This document shows, piece after piece, positions 9,008 to 59,108 of a DNA stretch of 64,000 bases (the first letter of the stretch is position 1; every line of letters starts with the position of its first letter). The notes beneath the pieces were generated by a model, which was not told the DNA's origin, made no database searches, and worked only from the letters and a program-made list of their open reading frames with translations. The stretch lies in sequence record LR745208.1. The stretch is one strand, 5' to 3'. The translations under genes and the position numbers were made by a program.

Positions 9008-9034
9008 CTATCGGCACAGCCAGGGCAAGTTTTA
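9008..9034 (-). promoter_or_regulatory. Sigma28/FliA-like repeated promoter
   Basis: TAAA-ACTTGCCCTGGCTGT-GCCGATAG. Confidence 0.8.
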
Positions 9035-9045
9035 GTGAAATCAGC

Positions 9046-9339
9046 CTACACATCAAGTCCGAGACGATGATCTTCTGCGTCTTCCCACGTCTTGATTGCC
9101 CGGCGCAGCTCCGGCTCGAAAGCATCCCCCCGCCACTTGTTGCCATGCCCAACACCTTCCGTAGGGACAAGGTCCAGGGCAATGACCGCACAACAGCCCT
9201 GTTCCTTGAACACGGTCGCAAGAAATTCATGCGAGTCAACTTGGGTTGTGCCCTTGAAATGCACGGCATAGAAGCCCACGCCGCCTGACCCGTTCCGGTG
9301 GTACGCCACCCCATACACCACAGCGATTCGATTTCCCAT
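9046..9339 (-). CDS. Hypothetical protein
   Basis: Start abuts the upstream stop. Confidence 0.6.
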   Translation of the reverse strand: MGNRIAVVYGVAYHRNGSGGVGFYAVHFKGTTQVDSHEFLATVFKEQGCCAVIALDLVPTEGVGHGNKWRGDAFEPELRRAIKTWEDAEDHRLGLDV

Positions 9340-9665
9340 CAGTCATCCCCGTTGCGAGGAATGTGTGTAGTCACGAACTTGAACTGCATCTTTTCCATCT
9401 TCAGCTGCTGCTTCTGGATCGACTTGATCTTGGCCCGGCGCATCTCTTCGGCCCGCGCCAGGGCTTCAGCTTCCGTGGTGTGCCAGTCCGGTCGGTGGAA
9501 GTAGGACTTGTACTGGCCCAGCCTCGCCTCAATCATCTTCTCGGAGACGTTTCGACAGTGCGTGGCATTGTGACACACCAGGATACCCTGGGTGAGGGCA
9601 TACTTGGTCACGTAGACCACGGGAAGGATCACGTCGTTCTCGGTTGGGTCGGTTTTGGTCTTCAT
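9339..9665 (-). CDS. Hypothetical protein
   Basis: Head-to-tail packing. Confidence 0.65.
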   Translation of the reverse strand: MKTKTDPTENDVILPVVYVTKYALTQGILVCHNATHCRNVSEKMIEARLGQYKSYFHRPDWHTTEAEALARAEEMRRAKIKSIQKQQLKMEKMQFKFVTTHIPRNGDD

Positions 9666-9691
9666 GGTTCTGTTACGCCCTTTCGGGGCAG

Positions 9692-9934
9692 TTAGCCCAC
9701 CACCCTGGTGACGTGCTTCAGATTTAGGGCCCGCGCACCATCCAGGATAATGTAGGTTGAGCCCAATTCGAGAGCTGGATGGAAGCGCCCCTCTTCAGTC
9801 AGGGCCTCAACTTTATCCATCACCAGCCCGTACACCATCCCCTTGAAGGGGGTAATCCACGGCTGCCAGGAACGGTCAGGTCGAACCCGTACCGTTTGCC
9901 TACTTGGACGTGAGTGATCATAGATGTCTCTCAT
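9692..9934 (-). CDS. Hypothetical protein
   Basis: SD AGGA; head-to-tail packing. Confidence 0.55.
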   Translation of the reverse strand: MRDIYDHSRPSRQTVRVRPDRSWQPWITPFKGMVYGLVMDKVEALTEEGRFHPALELGSTYIILDGARALNLKHVTRVVG

Positions 9935-9937
9935 GTC

Positions 9938-10192
9938 CTAGCCCTTTGTGTTGATATCTACTGTGAAGCCCAGTTTCTCAAGCTCGGCCCCGAGTTGGAC
10001 GGCATCGTTCTCACCTTGTTTGGTTGGCCAGAACTTCAGTTCCCGCTCCTTCACGGTTGCCTTGACCTTCGCAGTGTCCATGGCTGTAATCCACATGTGG
10101 GTTCCACATACGAACTTGGACACTACCAACGCAACTTCTCGGTCCAGGTCCAACTGTTCCCAGGTCTCAATATCCCATGTCACAACGATCAT
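9938..10192 (-). CDS. Hypothetical protein
   Basis: Start revised to ATG 10192, 1 nt after the upstream stop. Confidence 0.6.
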   Translation of the reverse strand: MIVVTWDIETWEQLDLDREVALVVSKFVCGTHMWITAMDTAKVKATVKERELKFWPTKQGENDAVQLGAELEKLGFTVDINTKG

Positions 10193-10193
10193 G

Positions 10194-10397
10194 TTACACC
10201 TCTGGGTCGGGTACGGGTTTGCCATCCTGGTCAACCCTAAGGTAGAGGGTGGCCCCAGCAGGGCAGGGGCAGTTGCGAAGCTCCAACTGGGCATCCTCAT
10301 CGTCCTGGTGACCCAACAGGGGGAGTTCCCGCCATGCTGTCAAGGTGTAGAGGGCACCACAGCAGGTGCAACGCTTGACGTATTCATGGTCGTGCAT
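10194..10397 (-). CDS. Small Cys-rich hypothetical protein after a sigma28-like promoter
   Basis: CTCCG...CPC; start follows the promoter motif. Confidence 0.65.
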   Translation of the reverse strand: MHDHEYVKRCTCCGALYTLTAWRELPLLGHQDDEDAQLELRNCPCPAGATLYLRVDQDGKPVPDPEV

Positions 10398-10412
10398 GGG
10401 TCTTACACCACC

Positions 10413-10439
10413 TTATCGGCACAGGGGAGGCAAGTTTTA
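10413..10439 (-). promoter_or_regulatory. Sigma28/FliA-like repeated promoter
   Basis: TAAA-ACTTGCCTCCCCTGT-GCCGATAA (exact sigma28 consensus). Confidence 0.85.
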
Positions 10440-10449
10440 GCAAAATCGC

Positions 10450-10677
10450 CTAGGCAGTTCGACGATCGTTGTCCGCAGGGCATTCCACAACCCGCATGGG
10501 TCGTGTCTCGGTCAGCGTGGCATGATGGGCCAAGGCCAGCTCCGCAGTGGTAAACCTCGCCCAATCGAGGTACCGCCAACCCCACTGATCTCGAACCTCA
10601 ACCGCCCACCATGTGCCAAACCGGGCCTCTAGATCCGTGTTCCAGCAACAGTCCGTACGTCTCATGGGTGTGGTCAT
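10450..10677 (-). CDS. Hypothetical protein after a sigma28-like promoter
   Basis: SD AGGA; stop directly precedes the next promoter. Confidence 0.65.
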   Translation of the reverse strand: MTTPMRRTDCCWNTDLEARFGTWWAVEVRDQWGWRYLDWARFTTAELALAHHATLTETRPMRVVECPADNDRRTA

Positions 10678-10695
10678 GTTCCTGTCCTCACAACC

Positions 10696-10722
10696 CTATC
10701 GGCACAGGATGGGCAACGTTTA
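10696..10722 (-). promoter_or_regulatory. Sigma28/FliA-like repeated promoter
   Basis: TAAA-CGTTGCCCATCCTGT-GCCGATAG. Confidence 0.8.
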
Positions 10723-10731
10723 GGGAAATCG

Positions 10732-12116
10732 TCACTCGGGGTCATTTTCCGGGTACATGACCATACGTATGATGTCAGGGTCGCCCGTCTGAAAAGCTAC
10801 GATGAGGAGACAGGTCGGAGATACCATCGTGAGGACAGACCGGGCATGCTTCTTGGAATTGCAGACTTGCAAGCCACAGTGAGGTTCTCAGCGGTGTTGG
10901 GGCCACCCTTGGCAAGGGGGAAAATGTGGTCCAGGGTGACCCTCTTACCACACGGTTTGCCACAGTAGGTGCACAGGTCCCCAGACGCCTTCGATTCCTT
11001 GAGGATCAGTTTGACTTCATCTGGGGTGAGGGTGTCCTCCACATCGTTGAGTCGGGCCATGCGTCGTGTGTTGTGGGCCGCTATCTTCTCTGGGTTGGCT
11101 TTCCGATAGGCAATGCCCATGGCCTTGATTTCATCCGGGTGGGCAGCACGCCAAGCTTCTCCGACTGCCTTAGACCTAGCCGCCCCAATGGGAGTATCCC
11201 GGTATTTTTTCTGCCACGCAATGGCACATTCCTTACAGCGTGGCTGCCTCTTATTGGATCTGGCGTCTGGTGAGAACTCTTCAAGGGGTTTCTGGACCCC
11301 ACATCCATTACACATCTTCATACCTAATGCCCGCAAGGCCTTCCGTTGGGCCATTGCCTCGACAATGGTTGGGTCTGGGTTACGGGCGGCATTGAGGCAA
11401 GCCCGGCATCTGGCCGTGTGCCCCTTCTCACTGTGTTTTCCAAAAGCCGCAATTGGCTTCAGTAGGTGACACCCCAGGCATACCTTTTCGGTGGGTGGGG
11501 GCTTGGGGGTGGGTGGATTGGCAATGTGGTCTGCCTCCCGTTCCGTTCTACGGGCAGCCCTTTTGGCCTTGTCCTTGATCTTTTTTCTCTCCTGAAGTTC
11601 TTCATACTTCTCAGGGTTTGCCTCTACCCAAGCCACATGTTGGGCGGCCAATTTCTCGGAATTCTTTTCCCTCCAGGCTCTTCTTGCAGCTTGGTCCCGA
11701 GTGGCATTATTCTTCCTCCAAGCCCTGTTGTTGTCTAGGTTTCTAGCTTTGAGGGCTTCCGCCTCCTCAGGGGCTTCCGTTTTGAGCTTTTCGAGCCTAG
11801 CATCTCGCTTGGTCTTTTTGCATGCCTTACAGTAGACGTCCAGTCCTCCCAGTTTGGTTGAGTCCCGGTAGAACTCAACATCTATCCTTCCACAGGCAGC
11901 ACAACACTTGGACCCCTCCTGAGAGATGTCTACCTCATATCGTAGCTTGCCCCTGGCAGCTACCTCTTCTGGATGGTCCTCCCGCCAGGACTTGGATCTA
12001 ACTCGTACACAAACCTTGCAGTGGGTCTTGTATCCATCTCGTGAGGTTGGGTCTGCGTAGAATTCATTGGTGGGCTTTGTAGCCCCACACTTGGTACATG
12101 TCTTTTCGGTGGGCAT
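10732..12116 (-). pseudogene. HNH endonuclease with several N-terminal Zn-finger repeats, frameshifted in the CxxCN motif
   Basis: CTYCG...TLDHIFPLAKGGPNTAENLTVACKS; CNSKKHAR continues in another frame from about 10863. Confidence 0.75.
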
Positions 12117-12149
12117 GCCCACTATACCACGGGCATGTTCCCCCGTTAC

Positions 12150-12884
12150 CTACTCTCGGAATTTTTCCCGAAGCTTCCGGATCACCCCGTCCCCCCAAGT
12201 AGCTGACTCCTCCAGGGTTTCCAGGGCATCTCGACGGCTGTAGCCTGCCTCCAGGAGCATTAGGAACCTGCCTGCACGCTGTTGTTCCTCCTCCATGGGG
12301 AAGGCACGCGTGAGCAGATCTTCACGTTGAAGGATAACTTCCTCATCATCAGTTCCCACGAGCAACTCCGGGGCATCGCCATTTTCTGTTAGACTCTCAA
12401 TTGACGTGCGCCGACGGTCCCGGCGAAGCATATTGGAGATGACACACCTAGCAATTAAATGCACCATGTGCCCCATAGAGGACTTCTTATGGTCCCACCT
12501 ACATGTGCCCCTATTCCTCACAAGTATGGCTCGGAACAGTTCCTGGATGAAGTCCTCGATATCTATACCCTCTTTGGCCAGCACAGATGTGAACCCACCC
12601 CCCGCATAGATCAGCTTCCTCACCTCGTGTCCGCGAAGCTCTAAATCGATACCGAGGGGGCTGCCATTGAGGCCACCATTTGGGCGCATGTTACGGTCGG
12701 TTGAGAGTTCCTTCAGCATGACTCGCAAGGGCAGAGATGGATTCCCTGGTAGGACCCGGACCCGGCGCTGAGTATGTCGAATGTATCGAACGGGACGGTA
12801 GACATACCGGCTTTGGCTTCTTGCTTCACCCGCCCAAGTGGTCCAGATTGGTTCTACCGTGGAAAGCTCGATTGGTTCTGGCAT
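12150..12884 (-). CDS. Sigma70-family (ECF-like) RNA polymerase sigma factor
   Basis: Region 2-like EDFIQELFRAIL...WDHKKSSMGHMVHLIARCVISNMLRRDRR and a C-terminal helical region 4-like segment. Confidence 0.6.
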   Translation of the reverse strand: MPEPIELSTVEPIWTTWAGEARSQSRYVYRPVRYIRHTQRRVRVLPGNPSLPLRVMLKELSTDRNMRPNGGLNGSPLGIDLELRGHEVRKLIYAGGGFTSVLAKEGIDIEDFIQELFRAILVRNRGTCRWDHKKSSMGHMVHLIARCVISNMLRRDRRRTSIESLTENGDAPELLVGTDDEEVILQREDLLTRAFPMEEEQQRAGRFLMLLEAGYSRRDALETLEESATWGDGVIRKLREKFRE

Positions 12885-12915
12885 AGCACACTCCTGGAAA
12901 CGGCGGGGATTGGGG

Positions 12916-12943
12916 AATATAGCACAGGCTTGGGGCCTGTCAA
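12916..12943 (-). promoter_or_regulatory. Housekeeping sigma70-type promoter for the sigma gene
   Basis: TTGACA-16 nt-TATATT with an extended -10 TG; SD AGGAG before the ATG at 12884. Confidence 0.7.
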
Positions 12944-13489: not shown

Positions 13490-13492
13490 TGG

Positions 13493-16953: not shown

Positions 16954-17184
16954 TCACTCGGCATTGTTGACCATTTCGGCTTCCGCCTCACCCGCCTCGA
17001 AGTCCCGATCCTCTTCCAGGTTGTCGCCCGTACCAGCGTACATCTCCCGAACGTTGTCATACCGCGAGTTGAACTCGTGATCCTCGTGTTCGGCGAGGGG
17101 GTTGCCCGCGTAGGGGTCCTGCATCGGGCAGATCAGGTAGCAGGGATTTGAGCCACAGACGTGGCAGACTGCTTGGGTCTTCAT
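16954..17184 (-). CDS. Small acidic Cys-containing protein after a sigma28-like promoter
   Basis: Start follows the promoter motif. Confidence 0.65.
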   Translation of the reverse strand: MKTQAVCHVCGSNPCYLICPMQDPYAGNPLAEHEDHEFNSRYDNVREMYAGTGDNLEEDRDFEAGEAEAEMVNNAE

Positions 17185-17205
17185 GTTGGTCTCACTCTCA
17201 ATACC

Positions 17206-17232
17206 CTATCGGCACGAGAAAGGCCATTTTTA
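17206..17232 (-). promoter_or_regulatory. Sigma28/FliA-like repeated promoter
   Basis: TAAA-AATGGCCTTTCTCGT-GCCGATAG. Confidence 0.8.
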
Positions 17233-17247
17233 GCGAAATCATACCCG

Positions 17248-27573: not shown

Positions 27574-27590
27574 GTGCTCTCCTACACCCC

Positions 27591-27617
27591 CTATCGGCAC
27601 GGGGAGGCAACTTTTTA
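27591..27617 (-). promoter_or_regulatory. Sigma28/FliA-like repeated promoter
   Basis: TAAA-AAGTTGCCTCCCCGT-GCCGATAG. Confidence 0.8.
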
Positions 27618-27619
27618 GT

Positions 27620-27931
27620 TCAATCGGCCGAATAGACCCGAAGGGGGTCCGTTTCGTCCTGGGTCGGGACCCGAAACACCTCCTCGGAGATCACATGTTT
27701 GTGCCCCAGGTTGCAAGTCTGCGTGATTGCAGAACAAACCAGGAACTTTTCATGGATGACCCGGAAGGGGATTTCCCCATAGTTGTCGCAGTTGGTCTGG
27801 TCCACCCTGTTGGCCCAAGCGATATCCGCCTCACAGACGCAGCAGGGGGCCAGTTCTTCCCCGTAAGGCTCCGGCTGCTCTTCGTAGTGGCCGGACTTAC
27901 AAATGCATTGGACATAGCCTTCGTAGCTCAT
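27620..27931 (-). CDS. Cys-rich hypothetical protein
   Basis: Overlap with the upstream stop. Confidence 0.65.
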   Translation of the reverse strand: MSYEGYVQCICKSGHYEEQPEPYGEELAPCCVCEADIAWANRVDQTNCDNYGEIPFRVIHEKFLVCSAITQTCNLGHKHVISEEVFRVPTQDETDPLRVYSAD

Positions 27932-29744: not shown

Positions 29745-29779
29745 GTGCCGTGGTCCTTGGGTGATGATCCTTACACCCC

Positions 29780-29806
29780 CTATCGGCACGAGAAGACAAC
29801 TTTTTA
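29780..29806 (-). promoter_or_regulatory. Sigma28/FliA-like repeated promoter
   Basis: TAAA-AAGTTGTCTTCTCGT-GCCGATAG. Confidence 0.8.
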
Positions 29807-29814
29807 GGGAAATC

Positions 29815-32800
29815 CTAGGATGCCTGCATTTCCCCTAGTTCCACTTCAATCTCGTCGAATTCCAGCTCGGGTTCCTCAACCTTAGGCTCGACCTTGACTC
29901 GAACCCGCTTGGTCTTCTTGGCTGGGGCATCCTCGGAAGCCACACTTACCCTAATCTTCTCAACTGCCTTCTCAACTGCCTTCTCACCCCCGACAGCGGG
30001 CTCATCGGCCATAGCATTGATGGTGGCCAACAGGACACCTGCACGCTTGAACAGGGGGCTGGTGATCAGGTCCAGGGCGTTGTCTCCAAGGTCGGCCATG
30101 CCATCGTCACGCATCACGGAGGCAATGAGGGCCAGTTTGTTGGCAGGCAGGAAGGCGTCCCCAGTGTCCTGATATTGGGACATGGGAAGCATGCCCAGTC
30201 CTGTACCCAGCAGGAGCTTGGTGATTGCGAGTCCGGAGGGGCTGGCCAGGAAGGCCATCGCCTTGCGCTTATTGGCCCCCAGGACCTGTGTCAGGAACTC
30301 CAGTAGCGGGTCTCTGACCGCCTTGGCGAGCTGCCTTGCTGCCACCCTGTTAGCTGCCCTACCGGCTTCAGTCTTGGCCGTCGCCATGACCCGTTGAGTT
30401 TTGGTCTTTTTGGCTACTTGTTGGGCAATCCCTGTGGCAGGCTCACAGGAGGGGTTGGCGGTCCCCATGTACACTTGAGCCTGTTGGATGGCTTTCTTCA
30501 GCTTGGTTTCTGCAAACTCTATTTCATCGGATAGCTGGTCTTCATTGGTCAGACCTTCGTCAGAGATGTCAGACCATTTGAATTCCCCACAAAGATGCTG
30601 GATCCGATCCTTCAATCTGGGAAGGCTACAGGGATCCACACTGTACTTCTCTGTTTCCAGGTCCCACAGTCCATACCAGACATCTCCCGTATCGGTTTTG
30701 ACCGCCTCAACAATCAGGTCATTCTCGGCCAAGAAACCGGTAACCGTCATTTTGAGGCCTTGGCGGATCTCCAGGTCTTCAATTGCCTTATCCAACTCCT
30801 TATCCAAATGTTTCAGATTACTGGGGATCCACTCCACGCCATATTGAGCGTGGAGACATTCCTTCAGGGGTATAAGGTAGGTGGCCCTCTTCGGCGGGAG
30901 TACCCACACTCCGGTATGTGGTTCCCACAGACCTATCAGTGAAACATCATTTTCGTTTTTGTCAGCTCGAATAACAACTTGATGTTCACGGAGGATGTCG
31001 GGCAGGCTCATTATGGAGTCCTGGGAGGCCTTAACAGCCCATTTGCCACCAGCATACCACCTACGTGCCTCATACAACAGGGTTTTTAGGTCTTCTTGGG
31101 AGTTGGCCAGCCCAGTGTAGGGGAGCTGGGCCTGCACCCAGTCAGTAACCTCATTGATGCCGAGAGTGCTGGGGTTACGGAGCCACTGGGTTTGGGCATG
31201 GCCAGATTTGGGGGACCAAACCTGATATTCCCAAATGTTTGCATCGGAAGGAGCCTTTCGTGCCCGAAAGGCATGCCCTTTGGCCAGCATCCGGTCCCGT
31301 AGATTGTCAACCGGGCTTGTGCGGATATAATGTGCGCGGGCTGAGGGTAGACGAGTGAAGCTGTCAATTCGAGTCAGAAGGTCTGCCGGAAGATCCGAGG
31401 CGGTCCCTGCCCAGGACTGCCAAGTTCTGGCACTGAGGTCCCACTCAATTTCCGTAGCATAGTAGGCGTCATTTTTGTCCCCACGGAATTTGGCAATCTC
31501 CTTAGCCAAATTCCTAATAGTCTCCTCAGGAGGGACTTGGCCACGGTCTTGATCTTTTGCAACTCTGGCCTTAGTTCGCTCTTCTGCACAAACCGTGTCC
31601 AGCCTTAGGGACCGATGTTTGGGGATATTCTTGGAAAGCTCCGTCCAAGTTGCCCATGCAGGAGTGGCAATGTAATCCTGGATCAGCTCCAAGTAGTGGC
31701 TCAGTGGAGGCGGGTCCCCTTTGGTCACCAAGGCATCCGCGGTGGAAATCTCTTGGGCAAATGCTTCAATTGTATCGGTAGGGCTCATGGGTGTATTAGT
31801 TACCCCCTTTCCCCTTTCGAGGCGGACAATATCCTGGATCTCCTCCCCATTATCATCCTCAGACAAGGCAAAATGTCGCCCTGGTCTTCCGCGTACATAG
31901 AAGCCACCCTGGCCGTCTTTTATGATTTCCGCCTCCCCTTTGATTAGCCAGTCGAACCATTCCCGCATCCAATCAGAATTAAGGTATGGGTGCTTTTTCT
32001 GTTCCCGTTGGATGTATGCCTCTACATGCGGCCTGTGGGAAGGTGGGCTCATGTGGGTAACCCTTGGCAGTGCCTCCTCCTTGGACCGCGCAATGAAAGC
32101 TTCAGTGCGGGCAATAGCGTCCGCAGGAACATGGTAGTGGGCTCCCATATCCTTGGGGGTTCCGAGAAACGGGGTGGTCTCCTTGATGAGGCCGGAGAGC
32201 CATTGGCCCATCTCCGTCCCACATACGGTTGACCAGTAGTTGCCCATAGATGTTAAGGTGTCTTCTTTTACCGGACCGAGCACCTTGACCCGTTCCTTGG
32301 CAACATAGGTTTCAGTGCGGGTAATCAGATCGTGGGTCACTTCCAAATCGGCCCCCACCTTTTGAATGGCTTTCCCGGCATCGCCCTGGCTCTTGATAAG
32401 ATGACCAACCCAGTTGGTCGACCATTGAAGGATCTCCGCTGAATTCTTTGAGGCATTAAGGATGTCCGAATGATCCCGATAGAACCCCCACAGGGACTTT
32501 TTGATATTAGCTGATTTCTCTTTGAGGGCAGCCCACTCCTTGGCTAGGGACTCCAAGTTATCAGTGACCCTGACACTACCCCACTCAGAAATTCCCATGG
32601 CCCCCGTAGAAGACAATAAGTTCTGTCGTGGAGGTTCAAATCCCACCAGAGCAGCAGCCTGTTGATTCGTTAGAGTCTGAGACGGGGTTTGAGACTGCTT
32701 CCATGTTCCCCATGCCTCAATCTCCGCTTTCACCTCGGCATGGGACATCTGCCGGGGGAACAGGAGGAGCCTGTTTTGTGTTAGGTAAGCTTCCCAGTTC

Positions 32801-33369: not shown

Positions 33370-33398
33370 GATTATACTGGTTACGCCTTAAAGTTGGT

Positions 33399-34289: not shown

Positions 34290-34299
34290 GGTCCCGGCG

Positions 34300-40596: not shown

Positions 40597-40599
40597 GGG

Positions 40600-41109: not shown

Positions 41110-41112
41110 GGG

Positions 41113-41832: not shown

Positions 41833-41835
41833 GGT

Positions 41836-43351: not shown

Positions 43352-43363
43352 TTGGACTTGCGC

Positions 43364-43744: not shown

Positions 43745-43896
43745 TCAAAATGTATTGCGGCCACATGCCCACTGGTGGTGGCACTGCACCTCCTCGACGG
43801 CTACGAACGGCGCTCCCATCGAGATATGCGGCCGAACCAGGGCACTCTGCGAAAATGCCAGGGAAGCCCTACGGCAAGGCAACCCAAGTGCAATCC

Positions 43897-44142
43897 CTAC
43901 GGCTTGCCTTCACGTTTATCGGTAGGTTCCTGGGGTTCCTTTGATTCCCGCCTGTCCGAGATGTAATCGCGGATCACTTCCCCAACATGGTGGACCAAGG
44001 GACTCAAGATAGCCGGGATGGCAGCAATAAGCAGCTCCTCCCAGAAAATGGAGTGTCGTTTCGAGTGGTTACTCATCAGCGTCTTCCTTTTCATAGCAGT
44101 GTTGGCAGATCCGTGGGTTAACCAGCCCAACCACCAGCTCAT
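43897..44142 (-). CDS. Small hypothetical protein (likely start MSNHSK)
   Basis: Hydrophobic core. Confidence 0.45.
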   Translation of the reverse strand: MSWWLGWLTHGSANTAMKRKTLMSNHSKRHSIFWEELLIAAIPAILSPLVHHVGEVIRDYISDRRESKEPQEPTDKREGKP

Positions 44143-44213
44143 ATAGAATAAGCAGCAGAAATGCCGTGATCCATGGGTGGTTGGTTACGAAAATGTCTAG
44201 TCCCTGCATGGCC

Positions 44214-44477
44214 TTAGAACCGATCCCCAGGACCCAAGTCCCCTAGAAGTTGCTCGAAAACAGTCACGATTTTCTGAACACCAGGGGGCCAGGAAGCTTT
44301 GTTGGTAATGACCTGTCCCCAATGGTCTTGGACCCTGAGGTAGACACAGTCTCTCGAACATATGGTCAAGTTAGCATACTTGGCCTCAACGGACCACTTG
44401 CAGGCCACGCCACTACCCGGGCTCTCCTCGTAGAAGGTGGCCTCCAAGGTCCCAACCGATGTCCTACTGGTGCTCAT
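44214..44477 (-). CDS. Hypothetical protein
   Basis: Head-to-tail packing. Confidence 0.55.
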   Translation of the reverse strand: MSTSRTSVGTLEATFYEESPGSGVACKWSVEAKYANLTICSRDCVYLRVQDHWGQVITNKASWPPGVQKIVTVFEQLLGDLGPGDRF

Positions 44478-44485
44478 GCCACAAC

Positions 44486-44671
44486 TTACGCTTCTGTGAC
44501 AGGGGCACGTACGATTTTGTAGCCCTTCAGGGCCAGCTCACGTTCAAGGAGATCGACCAACTCCAACATCGCCCGTTGGGAGGGATGGGAGTCCCCATGC
44601 TTGAGTATCTCACGCAGAACTTGAGTGATGTCGTACTGTTGGAGGGCATCGGGGGAGTTGGTGGCGTTCAT
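44486..44671 (-). CDS. Small hypothetical protein at the divergence point
   Basis: Last minus-strand ORF before the strand switch. Confidence 0.55.
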   Translation of the reverse strand: MNATNSPDALQQYDITQVLREILKHGDSHPSQRAMLELVDLLERELALKGYKIVRAPVTEA

Positions 44672-44731
44672 GAAGGCAAATTCCTCGTTGGGGGTGTAAC
44701 AACCTTACCGCTATTGGCCTGACGATTTCTC

Positions 44732-44758
44732 TAAAAAGTTGTCCCCTCGTACCGATAG
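44732..44758 (+). promoter_or_regulatory. Sigma28/FliA-like repeated promoter
   Basis: TAAA-AAGTTGTCCCCTCGT-ACCGATAG, then SD AGGA and ATG 44773. Confidence 0.8.
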
Positions 44759-45035
44759 GGTGTAGGAACACCATGAAGACCTCGCCTTCCCGTATCGAAG
44801 ATCATCCCCTGACTGGCAAATGGGACGGGAGCTATCCGGGTGTGCCCTGGCCGTTTTTGACAATGGCCGGGCGGAAGTAGCCCTGAACCCTGCCCAGCTG
44901 AAGCGGGCCCGACCCTACGTAAATCGACTGACCGTGAAAGGTTGAGCATTTCCCTGGTGATTGGCGGAAAATGGCCAAGGAAGCCAGGGAGCCACTCAAA
45001 ACCAACTTCGGGGACATCCTCAAGAAGATGATGCC

Positions 45036-48491: not shown

Positions 48492-48501
48492 TCGATTTTG
48501 C

Positions 48502-48528
48502 TAAAAAGTTCCCTCCTGGTACCGATAG
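48502..48528 (+). promoter_or_regulatory. Sigma28/FliA-like repeated promoter
   Basis: TAAA-AAGTTCCCTCCTGGT-ACCGATAG. Confidence 0.8.
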
Positions 48529-48545
48529 GGGGTAAGGAACCAACC

Positions 48546-48746
48546 ATGAGCACCCCCGTCCGTCTCGGCTACGTTGAGGAGCGCACCCTGCGGGAACTGG
48601 CTCAAGGTGCCACAAACTGCCCCCACGACAACACCTGGAAGCGTACCGTGCGAGCCCTGGCCAAGAAGGGACTCGCCCGTCCCGTTCCCGGAATGCCAGA
48701 ATTTTATGATGTCACAGAAGCCGGGCGAGTTTGGATGGCCAAGTAG
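48546..48746 (+). CDS. Small winged-helix-like protein
   Basis: TVRALAKKGLA...YDVTEAGR; SD AAGGA. Confidence 0.6.
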   Translation: MSTPVRLGYVEERTLRELAQGATNCPHDNTWKRTVRALAKKGLARPVPGMPEFYDVTEAGRVWMAK

Positions 48747-48986: not shown

Positions 48987-48989
48987 GCT

Positions 48990-49829: not shown

Positions 49830-49838
49830 CGAATTCAC

Positions 49839-49865
49839 TAAAAAATCGCCTGCTTGTGCCGATAG
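49839..49865 (+). promoter_or_regulatory. Sigma28/FliA-like repeated promoter
   Basis: TAAA-AAATCGCCTGCTTGT-GCCGATAG. Confidence 0.8.
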
Positions 49866-49882
49866 GGTGTTGAGGCTACTAA

Positions 49883-50071
49883 ATGAACATTGAACAACGC
49901 TATGACCTGATTGCAACCAAGGTGACGCTGGACGGCAGACCCGCCCGTATCTGTGGGGCAAAATGCCAGTTCGCAGTTGTGCGAGCCCTGGACGGGTCCA
50001 CCGGGGACTTTCAGTGGGCTTGGGAGACCGTGGCTCATGTGGTCGCCAATGGGGGGAGGTTTCGGAGCTGA
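49883..50071 (+). CDS. Small hypothetical protein
   Basis: SD GAGG right after the promoter. Confidence 0.7.
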   Translation: MNIEQRYDLIATKVTLDGRPARICGAKCQFAVVRALDGSTGDFQWAWETVAHVVANGGRFRS

Positions 50072-52205: not shown

Positions 52206-52350
52206 CTGTGGAGCCAAGGGGATAAGATGGAGCTGGTTGTCCAGCTTAGCCTGTCCATACCCAGGGCCGAAGCCAAGCGAGAGATCGCTGGGCTGGTCAA
52301 GCTCCTGAAGATGTTCGCCAAGTAATCGGTCAAGTAGCCGTCGATTTCCC

Positions 52351-52377
52351 TTAAAAGTCGCTTCCTCGTACCGATAA
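52351..52377 (+). promoter_or_regulatory. Sigma28/FliA-like repeated promoter (variant -35)
   Basis: GATTTCCC-TTAA-AAGTCGCTTCCTCGT-ACCGATAA. Confidence 0.75.
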
Positions 52378-52393
52378 GGTGTAAGGAAGAGAC

Positions 52394-52972
52394 ATGGCCA
52401 GCAAAATCGTCAAGAATGTCGTTGATCGCTTCCGGGACAAAACAGCGATGGCTGTGGTTCTCCGTGGCGTGGTCAACCATGACTGGGGATGGTTCTCTCG
52501 GGAAGACCCCAGGATGCACCTTCAGACCGTGGACCAAAAATCCCGTGGGGGAAGGGGCCGGGCCAAGGTGTGGTTGGAAACCCAAGGGCAGCGCACTTTT
52601 GAATGGGCCGAAGGCCCCATTTCCGGCCCCGACCGGAAGAAGCTTCAGGCCAAAGTTGTGGCAGATCGCCAGAGCATCGAGGCCCTGTGGGTGGAGTTTA
52701 TGATTAGGAACCGATGGCTCAAAGCTGAGGTTTCTGGATCCATTGTAACACTCACGGCATACCCTGGGCAACACAATGCTTTCGTTCGTAGGATCGACCT
52801 GACCAAAGAGCTCCCTGGGGCCTATGACCCCCAGACTCAACCAAACTGGGCCGAGCAAACTCTCCTAGTCTCCCTCGATCCTACAACCTCCCTCTTAGCT
52901 GTGGGACCCAACCCTGAGATGGATCACCGGGACCATTTTGACCTGGGACCAATCCTCTGGGGGAATTCCTAA
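52394..52972 (+). CDS. Hypothetical protein, DUF4160-like N-terminal half
   Basis: REDPRMHLQ...AKVWLE...SIEALW; SD AAGGA. Confidence 0.6.
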   Translation: MASKIVKNVVDRFRDKTAMAVVLRGVVNHDWGWFSREDPRMHLQTVDQKSRGGRGRAKVWLETQGQRTFEWAEGPISGPDRKKLQAKVVADRQSIEALWVEFMIRNRWLKAEVSGSIVTLTAYPGQHNAFVRRIDLTKELPGAYDPQTQPNWAEQTLLVSLDPTTSLLAVGPNPEMDHRDHFDLGPILWGNS

Positions 52973-56943: not shown

Positions 56944-56977
56944 TCCATCGGAATTCCAACCACTTAGGTGAATTCAC

Positions 56978-57004
56978 TAAAACTTGTCTCCGCCGTACCG
57001 ATAG
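56978..57004 (+). promoter_or_regulatory. Sigma28/FliA-like repeated promoter
   Basis: TAAA-ACTTGTCTCCGCCGT-ACCGATAG. Confidence 0.8.
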
Positions 57005-57038
57005 GGAGTGTAAGCTATCAACACCAGGAGGCAGCATC

Positions 57039-57350
57039 ATGGACCGGGACACCTACCAACTGACCCAGCATTCCAATATCCGCCAGCAGCAGCGAGGCTT
57101 GAAGGAAGAGATTCGAGATCTGATCTTCTGGTATGGGCAGGAGTTCCGTGGTGCCCATGGGGCCACCCACATGGCACTTGTTGAGCGGGAGCTTCCGCCA
57201 GAAATCCAGGGGGATCCGATGGTTGTCGGGGCCCGTGATTGGGTTCTGGTGGTGAGCAAGGGAATCCTGATCACCTGCTACCGGCGGCGAAATGCCGTTC
57301 AGGCGCTTCGCCGCCAAAGCGAAGCTAGGGCCAAGCACCACAGCCACTGA
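57039..57350 (+). CDS. DUF4258-like small protein
   Basis: LTQHSNIRQQQRG...LVVSKGILITCY; SD AGGAGG. Confidence 0.6.
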   Translation: MDRDTYQLTQHSNIRQQQRGLKEEIRDLIFWYGQEFRGAHGATHMALVERELPPEIQGDPMVVGARDWVLVVSKGILITCYRRRNAVQALRRQSEARAKHHSH

Positions 57351-57361
57351 GGGGGCTACAA

Positions 57362-57643
57362 ATGATCAACGGCGTCTACGATTCCACCGATTGTTATGTG
57401 ATCGTAACTGATGCAGATAATGGGACCATTCTGACGGATGTGCACATCGCCAGTGGGGTGACGCAGGTGCTTGATGAAATGGGGTGGGACGTGGAGATCC
57501 GTGCCCCCCGTCGTGGTGAGGCTCCTGGCACGTATGCACGGCGATCGGATGGGACCCTTCAGATTCTTGGGTTCTCGATCCCGGTGCCCGAGGCACTGGA
57601 TCATGTGCTCAACAAGGCACTGGATGCCTATTTCGAGGGGTAG
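57362..57643 (+). CDS. Hypothetical protein
   Basis: SD GAGG. Confidence 0.65.
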   Translation: MINGVYDSTDCYVIVTDADNGTILTDVHIASGVTQVLDEMGWDVEIRAPRRGEAPGTYARRSDGTLQILGFSIPVPEALDHVLNKALDAYFEG

Positions 57644-57656
57644 CAGTCGAATTCGC

Positions 57657-57683
57657 TAAAAATTTGGCCGCCCGTGCCGATAG
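57657..57683 (+). promoter_or_regulatory. Sigma28/FliA-like repeated promoter
   Basis: TAAA-AATTTGGCCGCCCGT-GCCGATAG. Confidence 0.8.
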
Positions 57684-57702
57684 GGTTGTGAGGTAGCCAA
57701 AC

Positions 57703-57972
57703 ATGAGCGAACACGAGCATACTTGGACTCCAGCGAGAGAAATGGCCGCTTACGAGTGTGCCTGCGGGGTCATGGGCCACAAGTCCGCGAAAACAGGGGT
57801 AGTCAAGGTGGTGACCACCATGAAGCCAGAGCCCAAGATGAGGGGCTCATGGAATTGGAACCATGCCCATGGTTGCCGCCGGATGCCTGCCATGGGGGCC
57901 ATGGGGTCTAATAGTGAGGATAGCAGCGCAGCCAACAATGGTGGGTACCTCTTTCACTGGTGGAGAAGATGA
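57703..57972 (+). CDS. Small HxHxW...CxC protein
   Basis: SD GAGG right after the promoter. Confidence 0.6.
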   Translation: MSEHEHTWTPAREMAAYECACGVMGHKSAKTGVVKVVTTMKPEPKMRGSWNWNHAHGCRRMPAMGAMGSNSEDSSAANNGGYLFHWWRR

Positions 57973-58922
57973 TGACTCGGCAGCACGACCTGAATCGCAC
58001 CCTCCTCCAGCCGGGGAGCCATGGCAAGCGGTTCTACCTGTCTTTTCTCGATGAAGCTCTGGCCCTCAAGTATCAGGATGGGGTGTACATTCTCAAGTGG
58101 ATTCGCAGCAGTAGCCAGTCGGGAGAGTCATCTCCCCGCATGTGCACCTGGAAGCACGACCTGACTGGTCGGACCCACGAAATCCTCACCGATTGCAACA
58201 AGGTAGATGCCCATCCATGGAATGGGCAGATTGAACCACCCAAGGCAGTTCCCAGCATCAACGAGGCGATCAACATGGCACTGATTACGATGACAACGGC
58301 TAAGAGCCCGATTCTCAAGTACCTTCTGGCCCATGGGGGCAAGGCCCCCGCGGCGGAAGTCGTGGAGGCAATGGTCCTGGCCTTGGGGGGCACCTTGGAA
58401 GGGGAAGAGAAGAAGCGGGCCAAGCAGGCCCTCACCAACTCGGCTTTCGAGCTTCGCCAGCGGATGGTACTGGTCAGCAACGGCAAGATTTGGGCACTGA
58501 CCGGGCTGGGCTTTCGGGTTGCCAGTGGGGAAATCCTGTTGCCAGCCAGGGATTACAAGGCCCCACTGGTTCGGGTTCGTGAGGCCCGGAAGTCCACCCC
58601 TACCCAGGCAGTGCCACTGGTGGCTGAACCGGTCAAGGCAGGAACCAAGGTTCGGGTGGCTGAGGGGCAGGACCTTCAGGTCGTCAAGTTGGAGGCCAAG
58701 CTGGCGAAGGGATTGAAGTCCCTGGTGGAGTACCAGCATCGGCAGCGCATTCTGGAGGCCAAGGTGGCTGCCCATACGTCCGAGCTGGCTGAAGCCCATG
58801 CCGAACGTGCGGTGCTGAGGGAGATGTACGTCAGGGATTCCGGTATCTCCCCAGAGGAACTCGCCAAGAAGATTCGTCGGGCGGTGCTCCAGCGCGAAAT
58901 GGATGCCTTGGACGGTGGGTAA
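57960..58922 (+). CDS. Hypothetical protein (possible winged helix plus coiled coil)
   Basis: 320 aa ORF; WALTGLG wing-like motif. Confidence 0.7.
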   Translation: MEKMMTRQHDLNRTLLQPGSHGKRFYLSFLDEALALKYQDGVYILKWIRSSSQSGESSPRMCTWKHDLTGRTHEILTDCNKVDAHPWNGQIEPPKAVPSINEAINMALITMTTAKSPILKYLLAHGGKAPAAEVVEAMVLALGGTLEGEEKKRAKQALTNSAFELRQRMVLVSNGKIWALTGLGFRVASGEILLPARDYKAPLVRVREARKSTPTQAVPLVAEPVKAGTKVRVAEGQDLQVVKLEAKLAKGLKSLVEYQHRQRILEAKVAAHTSELAEAHAERAVLREMYVRDSGISPEELAKKIRRAVLQREMDALDGG

Positions 58923-58947
58923 GAAACTGATCCCACCGTGCCGATAG
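58920..58947 (+). promoter_or_regulatory. Degenerate copy of the sigma28-like promoter with no SD or substantial ORF downstream
   Basis: GTGCCGATAGG present; weak -35. Confidence 0.45.
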
Positions 58948-58979
58948 GTATTTGAATGCCCCCACCTGAGCTTCCCTGA

Positions 58980-59034
58980 GGATGCCCGCTTACAGTGGGC
59001 CTACGAGCTTCTGGCCCACTGTAAGCGGGCATCC
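58980..59034. repeat. Perfect 22-bp inverted repeat with an 11-nt loop
   Basis: GGATGCCCGCTTACAGTGGGCC-TACGAGCTTCT-GGCCCACTGTAAGCGGGCATCC. Confidence 0.95.
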
Positions 59035-59081
59035 CACTGGAAGTAGGGTCACGAGAAAAACATAGCCTCCTCTGAATTCGC

Positions 59082-59108
59082 TAAAAGTTCCCCTTCTCGT
59101 ACCGATAG
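59082..59108 (+). promoter_or_regulatory. Sigma28/FliA-like repeated promoter
   Basis: TAAA-AGTTCCCCTTCTCGT-ACCGATAG. Confidence 0.8.

What the first reader, a model, noticed from the sequence alone, without database searches (positions are those of the whole stretch)
9008..59108. Thirteen-copy sigma28/FliA-type promoter regulon that partitions the region into cassettes
Seen in sequence: the motif G(A)WTTYNCTAAA-N15(ending GT)-RCCGATAR-GG occurs on the minus strand at 9008, 10413, 10696, 17206, 27591 and 29780. It occurs on the plus strand at 44732, 48502, 49839, 52351, 56978, 57657 and 59082, with a degenerate copy at 58920. Each copy faces the coding direction, usually just after a stop codon and shortly before an SD and ATG. 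Established: the sigma28 (FliA/SigD/WhiG) consensus is TAAA-N15-GCCGATAA, matched here with the exact spacing. Inference: the phage either uses a host motility/developmental sigma to start early genes, linking infection to host state, or reads these promoters with its own sigma. The near-identical promoters could also act as recombination points for shuffling small-gene cassettes.
Basis: partly seen in the sequence, partly recalled or inferred. Interest (0 to 1): 0.85.

Follow-up and report, generated by a model that had tools for sequence, protein, structure and literature searches.

The report
Phage sigma-factor promoter set, sigma28 look-alike
A 485-kb groundwater phage carries about fifty near-identical 50-base promoter-plus-ribosome-site modules (13 in this window) that resemble bacterial flagellar sigma-28 promoters but are most likely read by the phage's own, previously unannotated sigma factor, encoded in the same window.

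Summary
All 13 copies and the degenerate one at 58920 exist within 1 nt of the stated positions, against 0.35 expected by chance.

The motif is larger and more widespread than reported. It is a ~48-nt, ~61-bit element, CGATTTC-N-CTAAAAAKT-(pyrimidine spacer)-GTRCCGATA-GGG-TnTTGAGGA, with the ATG about 20 nt after CCGATA. The complete genome (GWB1_PHAGE_COMPLETE_CIR-CU-CL_55_23, LR745208.1) holds 50 strong copies. Forty-six lie in one non-structural third, and 49 of 50 point the same way as the next gene.

It aligns base-for-base with the sigma-28 consensus, but related huge phages keep the same architecture with a different -10 box (TTGTTA or CCGTTA). That argues against a conserved host sigma-28.

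ORF 12150-12884, annotated "hypothetical", belongs to a large divergent sigma-70 family: the profile hits solved sigma-H at E=1e-8, and 23 of 75 members match Sigma70_r2. It sits behind the genome's best sigma-70-type promoter. Its unique substitutions cluster in sigma region 2, the part that reads -10 boxes.

Best model: host sigma-70 makes the phage sigma, which then fires about 50 delayed-early promoters. An RNA structure and duplicated or mobile cassettes were tested and rejected. This is a new member of a known kind, and it lacks transcription-start or biochemical evidence.

The parts
8995..9043 (-). Promoter-RBS module, followed by a 169-aa ORFan (8479-8988)
   Evidence: PWM 55 bits. Sequence and downstream ATG. 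No Pfam family for the product.
10400..10448 (-). Promoter-RBS module and the only exact TAAA-N15-GCCGATAA match, followed by a 67-aa ORFan (10194-10397)
10683..10731 (-). Promoter-RBS module, followed by a 75-aa ORFan (10450-10677)
17193..17241 (-). Promoter-RBS module, followed by a 76-aa ORFan (16954-17184). It heads the 6.5-kb array that contains the exoribonuclease gene, the sigma gene and the HNH gene.
27578..27626 (-). Promoter-RBS module, followed by a 145-aa ORFan (27136-27573)
29767..29815 (-). Promoter-RBS module abutting the stop codon of the 1184-aa ORF, followed by a 134-aa ORFan (29340-29744)
44723..44771 (+). Promoter-RBS module and first promoter of the rightward gene block at the divergent switch, followed by a 35-aa ORF (44773-44880)
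48493..48541 (+). Promoter-RBS module, followed by a 66-aa ORF (48546-48746)
49830..49878 (+). Promoter-RBS module, followed by a 62-aa ORF (49883-50071)
52342..52390 (+). Promoter-RBS module (CTTAAA variant), followed by a 192-aa ORF (52394-52972) and then a 1323-aa protein with a methyltransferase domain
56969..57017 (+). Promoter-RBS module, followed by a 103-aa ORFan (57039-57350)
57648..57696 (+). Promoter-RBS module, followed by an 89-aa ORFan (57703-57972)
59073..59121 (+). Promoter-RBS module, followed by a 157-aa ORF (59124-59597) with weak DUF4357/RAMA hits
58920..58960 (+). Decayed copy that retains only the -10 half. It lies 161 nt upstream of the intact 59081 copy, like the tandem promoter pairs seen in relatives.
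   Evidence: Core-only PWM 8.4 bits and sequence. Tandem pairs in relatives.
12150..12884 (-). Gene for a divergent sigma-70-family factor (sigma2 + sigma4, no sigma3; 244 aa), the candidate reader of the motif
   Evidence: - Weak sigma70-ECF HMM hits, E 1e-3.
- AF2 model. Sigma factors top the Foldseek hits in both PDB and BFVD.
- The family profile hits sigma-H 3mzy at E=9.7e-9.
- 23 of 75 family members match Pfam Sigma70_r2.
- The authors annotated it as a hypothetical protein.
12916..12943 (-). Sigma-70-type promoter of the sigma gene: TTGACA, 16-nt spacer, (TG)c, TATATT. It lies about 35 nt upstream of the ATG.
   Evidence: 11/12 match with an extended -10 TG. It is the best such site in the whole genome and is intergenic. 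Sequence.

Best explanation
The 13 motifs belong to a class of about 50 phage promoters. Each is a compact transcription-plus-translation start module with these parts:
- an upstream box, CGATTTC (about -43 to -37);
- a -35 element, CTAAAAA (-35 to -29);
- a fixed-length pyrimidine-rich spacer;
- an extended -10, GT-R-CCGATA (-17 to -9);
- a GGG discriminator;
- a predicted purine start about 8 nt after CCGATA;
- a Shine-Dalgarno block at the very 5' end of an ~11-nt leader, then the ATG.

The promoters are most likely read by the host's core RNA polymerase carrying the phage-encoded, highly divergent sigma-70-family factor made from ORF 12150-12884.

That gene has its own strong host-type (sigma-70) promoter, so the inferred order is:
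1. Host sigma-70 holoenzyme transcribes the sigma gene.
2. The phage sigma replaces sigma-70 on the core enzyme.
3. The ~50 modules fire. They drive the small ORFan (host-takeover-type) and nucleic-acid-metabolism genes of the non-structural third of the genome, as a delayed-early or middle class.

The resemblance to sigma-28 promoters is real at the sequence level, but it is a property of this phage's own -10 box rather than of the promoter lineage.

**Shown:** the motif, its statistics, its anatomy and orientation, the family-level sigma identity of the ORF, the sigma-70-type site, and the variant boxes in relatives.

**Inferred:** that the motifs initiate transcription, that this particular sigma reads them, and the timing.
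For: **Promoter anatomy**
- 50 copies score 35 bits or more, against a background of -76 +/- 15.
- About 61 bits are organised as discrete boxes with a constant-length, weakly conserved spacer.
- 49 of 50 copies are co-oriented with the next called gene.
- The ATG lies within 27 nt in 40 of 49 copies, and the purine block ends a median 7.5 nt before the ATG.
- Aligned to a solved sigma-28 promoter, the predicted +1 falls on a conserved purine.

**Alternatives to a promoter**
- Not RNA structure: RNAalifold gives 0 pairs, and the explicit helix shows no covariation. There are no Rfam hits.
- Not duplication: there is no flank homology or paralogy between copies.

**A sigma factor is present**
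- The family profile hits sigma-H (3mzy) at E=9.7e-9.
- 23, 9 and 5 of 75 members match Sigma70_r2, Sigma70_ECF and Sigma70_r4_2 respectively.
- Foldseek ranks sigma factors first in two libraries.

**Pairing of this sigma with the motif**
- It is the only sigma2+sigma4 gene found.
- This is the only abundant intergenic motif in the genome.
- Relatives that carry the sigma homologue also carry the same promoter architecture upstream of genes and co-oriented with them, but with TTGTTA or CCGTTA in place of CCGATA.
- The window's sigma deviates from 74 relatives at 6 near-invariant positions, all in sigma2. P129R, F137M and Y140M are unique. This parallels a private -10 box beside a shared -35.

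**Cascade**
- The best sigma-70-type site in the genome sits in front of the sigma gene.

**No own polymerase detected**
- No RNA-polymerase domains appear in the 15 largest ORFs tested.

**Precedent**
- phiEco32 gp36 and phage 7-11 gp47 are diverged sigmas with different promoter consensus sequences. Jumbo phages that lack an RNA polymerase encode sigma factors.
Against: - No transcription-start, expression or binding data exist, and the phage is uncultured.
- The window protein itself is below every curated sigma threshold. Pfam finds no family, NCBIfam gives E 1e-3, and hhalign against single RpoE or FliA sequences gives probability of 1% or less. Its sigma status is therefore transitive, through the family, plus fold-level evidence with weak global E-values.
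- The sigma-promoter pairing rests on co-occurrence and on a three-lineage parallel, not on statistics. Three other contigs that carry the homologue show no motif in the 2-21 kb available.
- The relatives' sigma genes lack a recognisable sigma-70 promoter.
- The sigma gene also lies 4.3 kb downstream of a motif copy (17207) with nothing obvious to stop read-through, so autoregulation or another order of events is possible.
- The motif matches sigma-28 well enough that host FliA, if the host has one, could recognise it.
- The RNA-polymerase search was not exhaustive.
Confidence: 0.55

Rival explanations
1. Host sigma-28 (FliA/SigD/WhiG) holoenzyme alone reads these promoters. On this reading the phage starts this gene set only in hosts whose flagellar or developmental sigma is active, and the 244-aa sigma serves some other promoter set.
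For: - 10-11 of the 12 consensus positions match, with the exact 15-nt gap, in all 50 copies.
- The alignment to the solved P. aeruginosa fliC promoter is base-for-base.
- The structural paper reports that single changes in the extended -10 GC do not significantly reduce transcription, so the G/A polymorphism is compatible.
- The authors' weak taxonomic signal (10% 'Spirochaetes', 4% Proteobacteria) points to phyla that are commonly flagellated, from general knowledge.
Against: - Homologous promoters in relatives carry TTGTTA or CCGTTA, which are not sigma-28 boxes, while the rest of the architecture is kept.
- The motif carries about 35 bits beyond the sigma-28 consensus: the upstream box, the GT, the GGG and the fixed purine block.
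- No other abundant motif exists for the phage sigma to read.
- Depending on a conditionally expressed, FlgM-inhibited host sigma for about 50 promoters would be a fragile strategy (inference).
- The host is unknown.
Confidence: 0.13
2. Dual recognition. The -10 box of this phage has converged on the sigma-28 consensus, so that host sigma-28 gives immediate expression in motile cells and the phage sigma then takes over or amplifies it.
For: - This accounts both for the precise sigma-28 match and for the phage sigma with sigma2 substitutions unique in its family.
- It would also explain why the sigma gene lies inside an array headed by a motif copy as well as behind its own sigma-70 promoter.
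Against: This is purely inferential, with no data on either holoenzyme. Convergence on CCGATA could be coincidental, since only 6-7 bases differ from the relatives' boxes. The host is unknown.
Confidence: 0.12
3. A different phage factor reads the motif. Candidates are one of the sigma-region-4-only HTH proteins (record 153886-154695 or 419691-420284) acting as an activator or appropriator on host holoenzyme, or an unrecognised phage RNA polymerase.
For: - Two extra sigma4-type HTH proteins exist.
- A sigma4-only gene is also called in one assembly of a relative (L032).
- The conserved upstream box CGATTTC could be an activator site.
- Many large ORFs have no detectable domains.
Against: - The -10 box is unlike a sigma-70 -10, so a sigma-70 appropriator model fits poorly (sequence).
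- The bipartite sigma-type layout argues against phiKZ/AR9-type or T7-type polymerases (general knowledge).
- No RNA-polymerase domains were found.
Confidence: 0.1
4. Not a promoter. Instead it would be a repressor or replication-protein binding site, an RNA processing or structural element, or a recombination or mobile cassette boundary.
For: High copy number and near-identity are also seen for operators, iterons and mobile promoter cassettes such as T4 PeSLs (general knowledge). The pyrimidine spacer and the purine block are complementary in composition.
Against: - There is no consensus RNA structure and no covariation, and no Rfam family.
- The copies are dispersed rather than clustered, and strictly co-oriented with genes at a fixed distance from the SD and ATG.
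- There is no homology beyond the ~50 nt, and the downstream genes are not paralogues.
Confidence: 0.05

Closest known systems
phiEco32 gp36 and Salmonella phage 7-11 gp47: phage-encoded ECF-like sigma factors with their own promoter classes (PMC8948821, PMC12276001)
   Same: - The phage lacks an RNA polymerase and encodes a divergent sigma-70-family protein.
- Host sigma-70 promoters act first, then a conserved phage-specific promoter class takes over.
- Related phages with diverged sigmas use different consensus sequences: tAATGTAtA versus GTAAtg-16-aCTA. This resembles CCGATA versus TTGTTA or CCGTTA here.
- The solved phiEco32 gp79-dependent RNAP complex (9m7y) appears among the fold hits.
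   Different: - Those systems have 6-8 promoters that drive middle or late (structural) genes in ~77-kb podoviruses. Here there are about 50 promoters, absent from the structural region, in a 485-kb genome.
- The motif here is tripartite, with an upstream box, and is fused to a 5'-terminal SD.
- The sigma here belongs to a different, unannotated family (598 clusters).
- Nothing here has been tested experimentally.
Bacterial sigma-28 (FliA/SigD/WhiG) class-3 flagellar promoters, TAAA-N15-GCCGATAA (PMC12784957)
   Same: The -35 CTAAA and the -10 (G/A)CCGATA sit at identical positions and spacing. There is an extended -10 upstream of CGATA and a purine start about 8 nt downstream.
   Different: - The last consensus A is G in 47 of 50 copies, and the T at -36 is not conserved.
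- Extra conserved blocks are present: CGATTTC, GT, GGG and TGAGGA.
- Homologous promoters in relatives lack the sigma-28 -10.
- No FliA-type (sigma2-sigma3-sigma4) protein is encoded by the phage.
- Dependence on sigma-28 is untested.
Bacillus phage SPO1 gp28 / T4 early-middle cascades (general knowledge)
   Same: A temporal cascade in which a host-sigma-transcribed phage factor redirects host core polymerase to many near-identical phage promoters in front of small host-takeover genes.
   Different: The sigma family and the promoter sequence are different. T4 uses appropriation of sigma-70 (MotA/AsiA) rather than a replacement sigma for its middle genes.
T4-type promoter-early stem-loops (PeSLs) as modular shuffling points (general knowledge)
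   Same: Repeated promoter elements lie between small early genes.
   Different: Here there is no stem-loop and no flank homology or sign of cassette duplication. Recombination at these 50-nt repeats remains possible but is unsupported.

Membership tests
Sigma-28 (FliA)-dependent promoter | -35 TAAA and -10 GCCGATAA separated by 15 nt | tested here: met
   All 13 window copies and all 50 genome copies have (C)TAAA-N15-(G/A)CCGATA(G/A). This is 10-11 of the 12 consensus positions at exact spacing, and it aligns to the P. aeruginosa fliC promoter.
Sigma-28 (FliA)-dependent promoter | Transcription depends on sigma-28 holoenzyme | not testable with these tools
   This needs in vitro transcription or reporters in fliA+ and fliA-deleted strains.
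Sigma-28 (FliA)-dependent promoter | A FliA-type sigma is available, encoded by the host or by the phage | tested here: inconclusive
   Phage: the best phmmer hit to E. coli FliA is E=0.07, and it is an isolated sigma4 HTH, so no FliA-type gene is present. Host: unassigned; the authors' profile is 75% unknown.
Sigma-28 (FliA)-dependent promoter | The sigma-28 -10 box is conserved in orthologous promoters, as expected if a conserved host sigma reads them | tested here: not met
   Relatives keep the upstream box, the CTAAA, the spacing and the GGG, but have GTTGTTA (L032/33, L038, L040/52, L057) or CCGTTA (L030).
Phage sigma factor with a cognate promoter class (phiEco32 gp36 / 7-11 gp47 / SPO1 gp28 kind) | The phage encodes a sigma-70-family protein | tested here: met
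   - The family profile hits sigma-H 3mzy at E=9.7e-9.
- 23 of 75 members match Sigma70_r2.
- Sigma factors top the Foldseek hits in PDB and BFVD.
- Caveat: the window protein alone is sub-threshold.
Phage sigma factor with a cognate promoter class (phiEco32 gp36 / 7-11 gp47 / SPO1 gp28 kind) | A conserved non-sigma-70 motif lies upstream of, and is co-oriented with, a set of phage genes | tested here: met
   50 copies, 49 of 50 co-oriented, with the ATG a median 20 nt downstream.
Phage sigma factor with a cognate promoter class (phiEco32 gp36 / 7-11 gp47 / SPO1 gp28 kind) | The sigma gene is itself expressed by host holoenzyme | tested here: inconclusive
   At the sequence level the genome's best sigma-70-type site (11/12 plus TG) lies 35 nt upstream of the ATG. 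It is not conserved in relatives, and there are no expression data.
Phage sigma factor with a cognate promoter class (phiEco32 gp36 / 7-11 gp47 / SPO1 gp28 kind) | The phage sigma plus host core initiates at the motif | not testable with these tools
   Only indirect support exists: co-occurrence in relatives, and sigma2-specific unique substitutions that parallel the private -10 box.
ECF-like (group 4) sigma architecture, for ORF 12150-12884 | Sigma2 and sigma4 domains joined by a short linker, with no sigma3 or sigma1.1 | tested here: met
   - The AF2 model has helical modules at 80-160 and 180-243 with a disordered 163-179 linker.
- Domain-level hits are to sigmaE region 2 (5or5) and SigC region 4 (2o8x, TM 0.64).
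- An ~80-residue N-terminal extension of unknown role is an addition.
Structured RNA element or SD-sequestering hairpin | A conserved secondary structure with covariation | tested here: not met
   RNAalifold gives 0 pairs. The explicit spacer/SD helix pairs in 60% of cells against 63% in shuffles, and its covariation is below the shuffles. There are no Rfam hits.
Mobile or duplicated promoter cassette (PeSL-like) | Homology extends into the flanks, or the downstream genes are paralogous | tested here: not met
   With the motif masked there are no flank matches apart from overlapping windows. There is one weak protein pair among the 49 first genes.

The most novel reading that the evidence does not exclude
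This phage has remodelled both its promoters' -10 box and the -10-reading region of its own sigma so that they converge on the host's sigma-28 specificity. The same ~50 promoters would then be fired by host FliA in motile cells, giving immediate expression that senses host state, and by the phage sigma afterwards. That would be a sigma-mimicry strategy coupling a huge phage's takeover programme to host motility or development.
Probability: 0.12. Interest if true: 0.8.

Novelty: new member of a known kind. Interest (0 to 1): 0.5.

Why it matters
Huge phages are known almost only from metagenomes, and their gene-expression programmes are essentially uncharted.

- **A ready-made regulatory map.** For a complete 485-kb genome we now have a defined class of about 50 promoters, a candidate reader, and a predicted cascade.
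- **A newly recognised sigma family.** A large protein family (at least 598 clusters at 50% identity) currently labelled hypothetical turns out to be sigma-70 relatives. That helps annotation of many other huge-phage contigs.
- **A possible natural specificity experiment.** The lineage-specific -10 boxes (CCGATA, TTGTTA, CCGTTA), paired with substitutions at otherwise invariant sigma2 residues, form a small series on sigma/-10 specificity. It can be tested with simple reporters.
- **Possible orthogonal parts.** If the pairing holds, the module and its sigma are also candidate orthogonal expression parts.
- **The caveat.** The sigma-28 resemblance is a warning against assigning phage promoters to host sigmas by consensus alone.

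Tried and rejected
- **RNA hairpin (anti-SD spacer pairing with the SD block).** Rejected.
- **Rfam families in the window or in the separate 85-nt repeat.** None found.
- **Exact extended motif in 2.9 million IMG/VR contigs.** It occurs only in this phage and in a 99.99%-identical 35-kb contig, so there is no independent conservation at that stringency.
- **A phage FliA homologue.** None found. The two sigma4 hits are HTH-only proteins.
- **Direct sequence proof that the 244-aa ORF is a sigma.** These all failed: Pfam, PHROGs, PDB phmmer, the narrow-profile (A2) hmmsearch, and hhalign against RpoE or FliA. Only the 75-member profile and the fold searches succeeded.
- **A second, sigma-70-like promoter class (TTGACA-N-TAnACT at 144-200 kb).** Not significantly enriched: 8 found against 4.5 +/- 2.1 expected. 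Strong sigma-70-like sites overall number 33 against about 25 in shuffles.
- **The enriched TTGACA word.** It belongs to an unrelated 85-nt repeat.
- **A sigma-70 promoter upstream of the sigma homologue in relatives.** Not found.
- **More relatives' contigs (L060-L062, L034).** No motif in the short stretches available.
- **A second motif copy at the divergent switch for the leftward 15-kb block.** None.
- **Host assignment from the source paper.** Inconclusive.
- **Cassette duplication or recombination.** No support.

Full report
**1.

A search for CTAAA-N16-CCGATA with at most one mismatch finds 15 sites in the window, against 0.35 +/- 0.54 in dinucleotide shuffles. Six are on the minus strand (9009, 10414, 10697, 17207, 27592, 29781) and seven on the plus strand (44731, 48501, 49838, 52350, 56977, 57656, 59081). 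The other two (17741, 31773) share nothing outside the pattern.

The strict textbook string TAAA-N15-GCCGATAA occurs only once, because this phage prefers G at the last position. The 'degenerate copy at 58920' is real. It keeps CCGTGCCGATAGGTATTTGA but has lost the -35 and the upstream box. With a 49-nt weight matrix the window is cleanly bimodal: the 13 copies score 49-62 bits and nothing else scores above -12.

**2. What the window is**

The window is bases 62001-126000 of LR745208.1. This is GWB1_PHAGE_COMPLETE_CIR-CU-CL_55_23, a complete, circular, manually curated 485,034-bp huge phage from Rifle groundwater, published in Al-Shayeb et al. 2020 (PMC7162821).

The authors' taxonomic profile is 75% unknown, 10% 'Spirochaetes' and 4% Proteobacteria. 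This gives no confident host.

**3. The motif is bigger and more numerous than reported**

I fetched the whole record in ten pieces and scanned it. There are 56 hits above 10 bits, and 50 of them score 35 bits or more, against a background of -76 +/- 15.

Forty-three of the 50 lie between 1.6 and 159 kb, and three more lie at 464-483 kb, which is adjacent on the circle. So 46 of 50 occupy one arc of roughly 180 kb. The 249-372 kb region holds baseplate, tail, intein-containing PolA and UvrD genes, and it has only two copies.

Across the 50 copies the information is about 61 bits, in discrete blocks. Numbering is from the last A of CCGATA:

| Block | Positions |
|---|---|
| CGATTTC | -34..-28 |
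| CTAAAAAKT | -26..-18 |
| Pyrimidine-rich spacer, weakly conserved and of fixed length | -15..-9 |
| GT-R-CCGATA | -8..0 |
| GGG | +1..+3 |
| TnTTGAGGA | +4..+12 |

**4. It behaves like a promoter fused to a ribosome-binding site**

- Forty-nine of 50 copies point the same way as the next called gene.
- Copies usually begin 0-10 nt after the upstream stop codon.
- An ATG that opens an ORF of at least 30 codons follows within 27 nt in 40 of 49 cases, with a median offset of 20.
- The purine block ends a median 7.5 nt (IQR 5-10) before the ATG, which is normal Shine-Dalgarno spacing.

I aligned the motif to the P. aeruginosa fliC sigma-28 promoter, which has -35 (-36)TCTAAAG(-30) and -10 (-15)GCCGATAA(-8) (PMC12784957). 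The phage elements fall at C-35..A-31 and C-14..A-9. The predicted +1 is the conserved purine of TGAGGA, A in 39 and G in 9 of the 50 copies. This gives leaders of about 11 nt with the SD at their 5' end.

The ten promoter-proximal products tested in the window are small proteins with no significant Pfam family. Larger genes further downstream include an HNH endonuclease, an ATP-dependent DNA ligase, an Rv2179c-like exoribonuclease, methyltransferases and R2K ATP-grasp proteins.

**5. Non-promoter readings were tested**

- RNAalifold on 49 copies predicts no pairs.
- The one plausible helix, spacer TTCTC with GAGGA, pairs in 60% of cells against 63% in shuffles and shows no covariation.
- Rfam finds nothing in the window.
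- With the motif masked, the copies share no flank homology apart from physically overlapping windows. The 49 first genes contain one weak paralogous pair.

Conservation is therefore confined to the ~50-nt element. That indicates selection on a site, not recent duplication or a mobile cassette.

**6. Who reads it? The phage encodes a sigma**

On its own it fails Pfam, PHROGs and PDB sequence searches, and reaches only E about 1e-3 against sigma70-ECF models.

It has about 30 homologues at 45-55% identity, some of them on contigs of 170-350 kb. An AlphaFold model built from that alignment is confident for two helical modules, residues 80-160 and 180-243.

- **Foldseek against PDB:** sigma factors take 15 of the top 17 places (sigmaE, M. 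tuberculosis sigmaH and sigmaL, BldN, AlgU, SigW and the phiEco32 gp79-dependent complex). Global E-values are weak, at 0.085 or higher. Single-domain matches are to sigmaE region 2 and to SigC region 4 (TM 0.64).
- **Foldseek against BFVD:** phage sigma factors also rank first (E=0.013, probability 0.96).
- **Profile search of 1.84 billion representatives:** 598 clusters at E of 1e-3 or lower, and 267 at 1e-30 or lower.
- **Profile of 75 diverse members against PDB:** it hits the solved sigma-H factor 3mzy at E=9.7e-9, from region 2 through region 4.
- **Pfam scan of those 75 members:** 23, 9 and 5 of them individually match Sigma70_r2, Sigma70_ECF and Sigma70_r4_2.

The ORF therefore belongs to a large, very divergent sigma-70-family clade. 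It has a sigma2-linker-sigma4 layout plus an N-terminal extension.

No FliA-type protein is encoded; the best phmmer hit is E=0.07, to an isolated HTH. No RNA-polymerase domains appear in the 15 largest ORFs examined.

**7. Evidence that links this sigma to the motif and disfavours host sigma-28**

(a) *Relatives.* Related huge phages that carry the sigma homologue also carry the same promoter architecture, upstream of genes and co-oriented with them. The -10 box is different:

| Lineage | Promoter sequence |
|---|---|
| GC-64% clade (L032/33, and IMG/VR contigs L038, L040/52, L057) | CGAWTTCGCTAAAC-N-GAGAGTTGTTA-GGGGTTGGAGG |
| L030 | CGAWTKTNACTAAG-N-TTTTCCCGTTA-GGGGGTGAAGG |

A host sigma-28, whose specificity is conserved across bacteria, would not explain such lineage-specific -10 boxes beside an unchanged -35, spacing and discriminator.

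(b) *Sigma2 substitutions.* The window's sigma differs from 74 diverse relatives at six near-invariant positions, and all six lie in sigma2 (residues 113-144). Three of them, P129R, F137M and Y140M, are found in no other member. It ties as the most deviant member of the family, with 7 deviations against a median of 1. Region 2 is the part of sigma factors that reads and melts the -10 element. So the protein and the promoter are each unusual in the corresponding part.

(c) *Only one abundant motif.* After masking, no other abundant intergenic motif exists that this sigma could serve.

(d) *Its own promoter.* Immediately upstream of the sigma gene lies TTGACA-16 nt-(TG)c-TATATT. This matches 11 of 12 positions and has an extended -10. 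It is the best sigma-70-type site in the entire genome, it is intergenic, and it lies about 35 nt from the ATG. The genome as a whole is not enriched for such sites (33 against about 25 in shuffles).

Together these suggest a cascade: host sigma-70 makes the phage sigma, and the phage sigma then fires about 50 promoters.

The precedent is direct. phiEco32 gp36 and phage 7-11 gp47 are diverged phage sigmas with different cognate promoters, and they follow sigma-70-driven early transcription (PMC8948821). Jumbo phages without an RNA polymerase typically encode sigma factors (PMC7824862).

**8. Caveats**

- Nothing here is experimental.
- The sigma identity of the window protein is transitive.
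- The pairing rests on three lineages, and three further homologue-bearing contigs show no motif in the 2-21 kb available.
- Relatives lack a recognisable sigma-70 site before their sigma gene and have iterated repeats there instead.
- The sigma gene also lies 4.3 kb downstream of a motif copy.
- The motif is close enough to the sigma-28 consensus that a host FliA could use it.

I therefore put 0.55 on the own-sigma model, 0.13 on host sigma-28 alone, 0.12 on dual recognition, 0.10 on another phage factor and 0.05 on a non-promoter element.

**9. Verdict**

'Early' timing and cassette shuffling are not shown.

In kind, this is a new member of the known class 'phage sigma factor plus cognate promoter set'. 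It is notable for four things: its size (about 50 modules); its compact promoter-RBS design; the previously unrecognised sigma family of at least 598 clusters; and an apparent natural series of matched sigma2/-10 changes.

Noticed in passing
L001:7629-7705 (record 7629-7705, outside the window): A suppressor-type tRNA with anticodon UUA, which would read the UAA stop codon, is encoded by the phage. The genome has about 36 tRNAs, mostly at record 141.8-201 kb on the plus strand.
   Followed up: no
L003:42532-42606 (record 142332-142406): ARAGORN reports a tRNA of undetermined identity with a four-base anticodon (ttta). It could be a frameshift-suppressor-like tRNA or an artefact.
   Followed up: no
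Record 1545(-), 181559(+), 228026(+), 374415(+), 460763(+); e.g. L004:31859-31950: There are five dispersed copies of a separate ~85-nt conserved element: ACCGTTGACAATCTATACGC..TTTATCCC..GGGTATCGGTTGTTTTGGAGCTATGCGGGTGA. It has no Rfam match and none of the copies is in the window.
   Followed up: partly
window 29815-44671, minus strand: About 15 kb of leftward genes have no copy of the motif and no recognisable sigma-70 site at the divergent switch (44672-44722). They include ORFs of 1184 and 1253 aa with no detectable domains, two R2K ATP-grasp genes and a multiubiquitin-domain gene. Their promoter is unknown.
   Followed up: partly
L030:11028-12747 and L033:10856-16879 (relatives): The relatives carry a second repeated motif upstream of small minus-strand genes. 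Read on the gene strand it is GGGTTCCGYACC..CCGGAAGGAGA..ATG. On the opposite strand it contains GGAAC, which resembles the ECF -35 core. No equivalent abundant motif turned up in the de novo search of the window's phage; this word was not searched for specifically.
   Followed up: no
L033:9880-9939 and L030:9839-9911 (relatives): The sigma-like gene of the relatives is preceded by iterated short repeats: CCCGGCGATCTT four times, and GGGAATCCGTGARGG three times. These look like binding sites for a regulator.
   Followed up: no
Record 284690-289966 (L006:35190-40466) and 300641-305866 (L007:1241-6466): The family-A DNA polymerase and a UvrD-type helicase each carry an intein, with LAGLIDADG/Hint and intein-splicing domains.
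   Followed up: no
Record 153886-154695 (L004:4186-4995, +) and 419691-420284 (L009:20491-21084, -): Two further ORFs have only a sigma-70 region-4 type HTH (Pfam Sigma70_r4, E 5e-9 and 3e-10). Among their top NCBIfam matches is a Planctomycetaceae-specific sigma subfamily model. Their role is unknown.
   Followed up: partly
window 10797-12122, minus strand: An HNH endonuclease gene (with an Stc1 zinc-finger-like domain) lies directly downstream of the sigma gene. It may be a homing-type insertion.
   Followed up: no
Protein family of window 12150-12884 (alignments A2, A3): The family is large, with 598 representative clusters at E of 1e-3 or lower, and appears essentially unannotated. None of the 32 closest homologues had a precomputed Pfam domain or a name other than 'hypothetical protein'. 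It has an invariant G..D..Q..RN.G.C signature and a conserved N-terminal PGNPSLPLRVML block in the closer relatives.
   Followed up: partly
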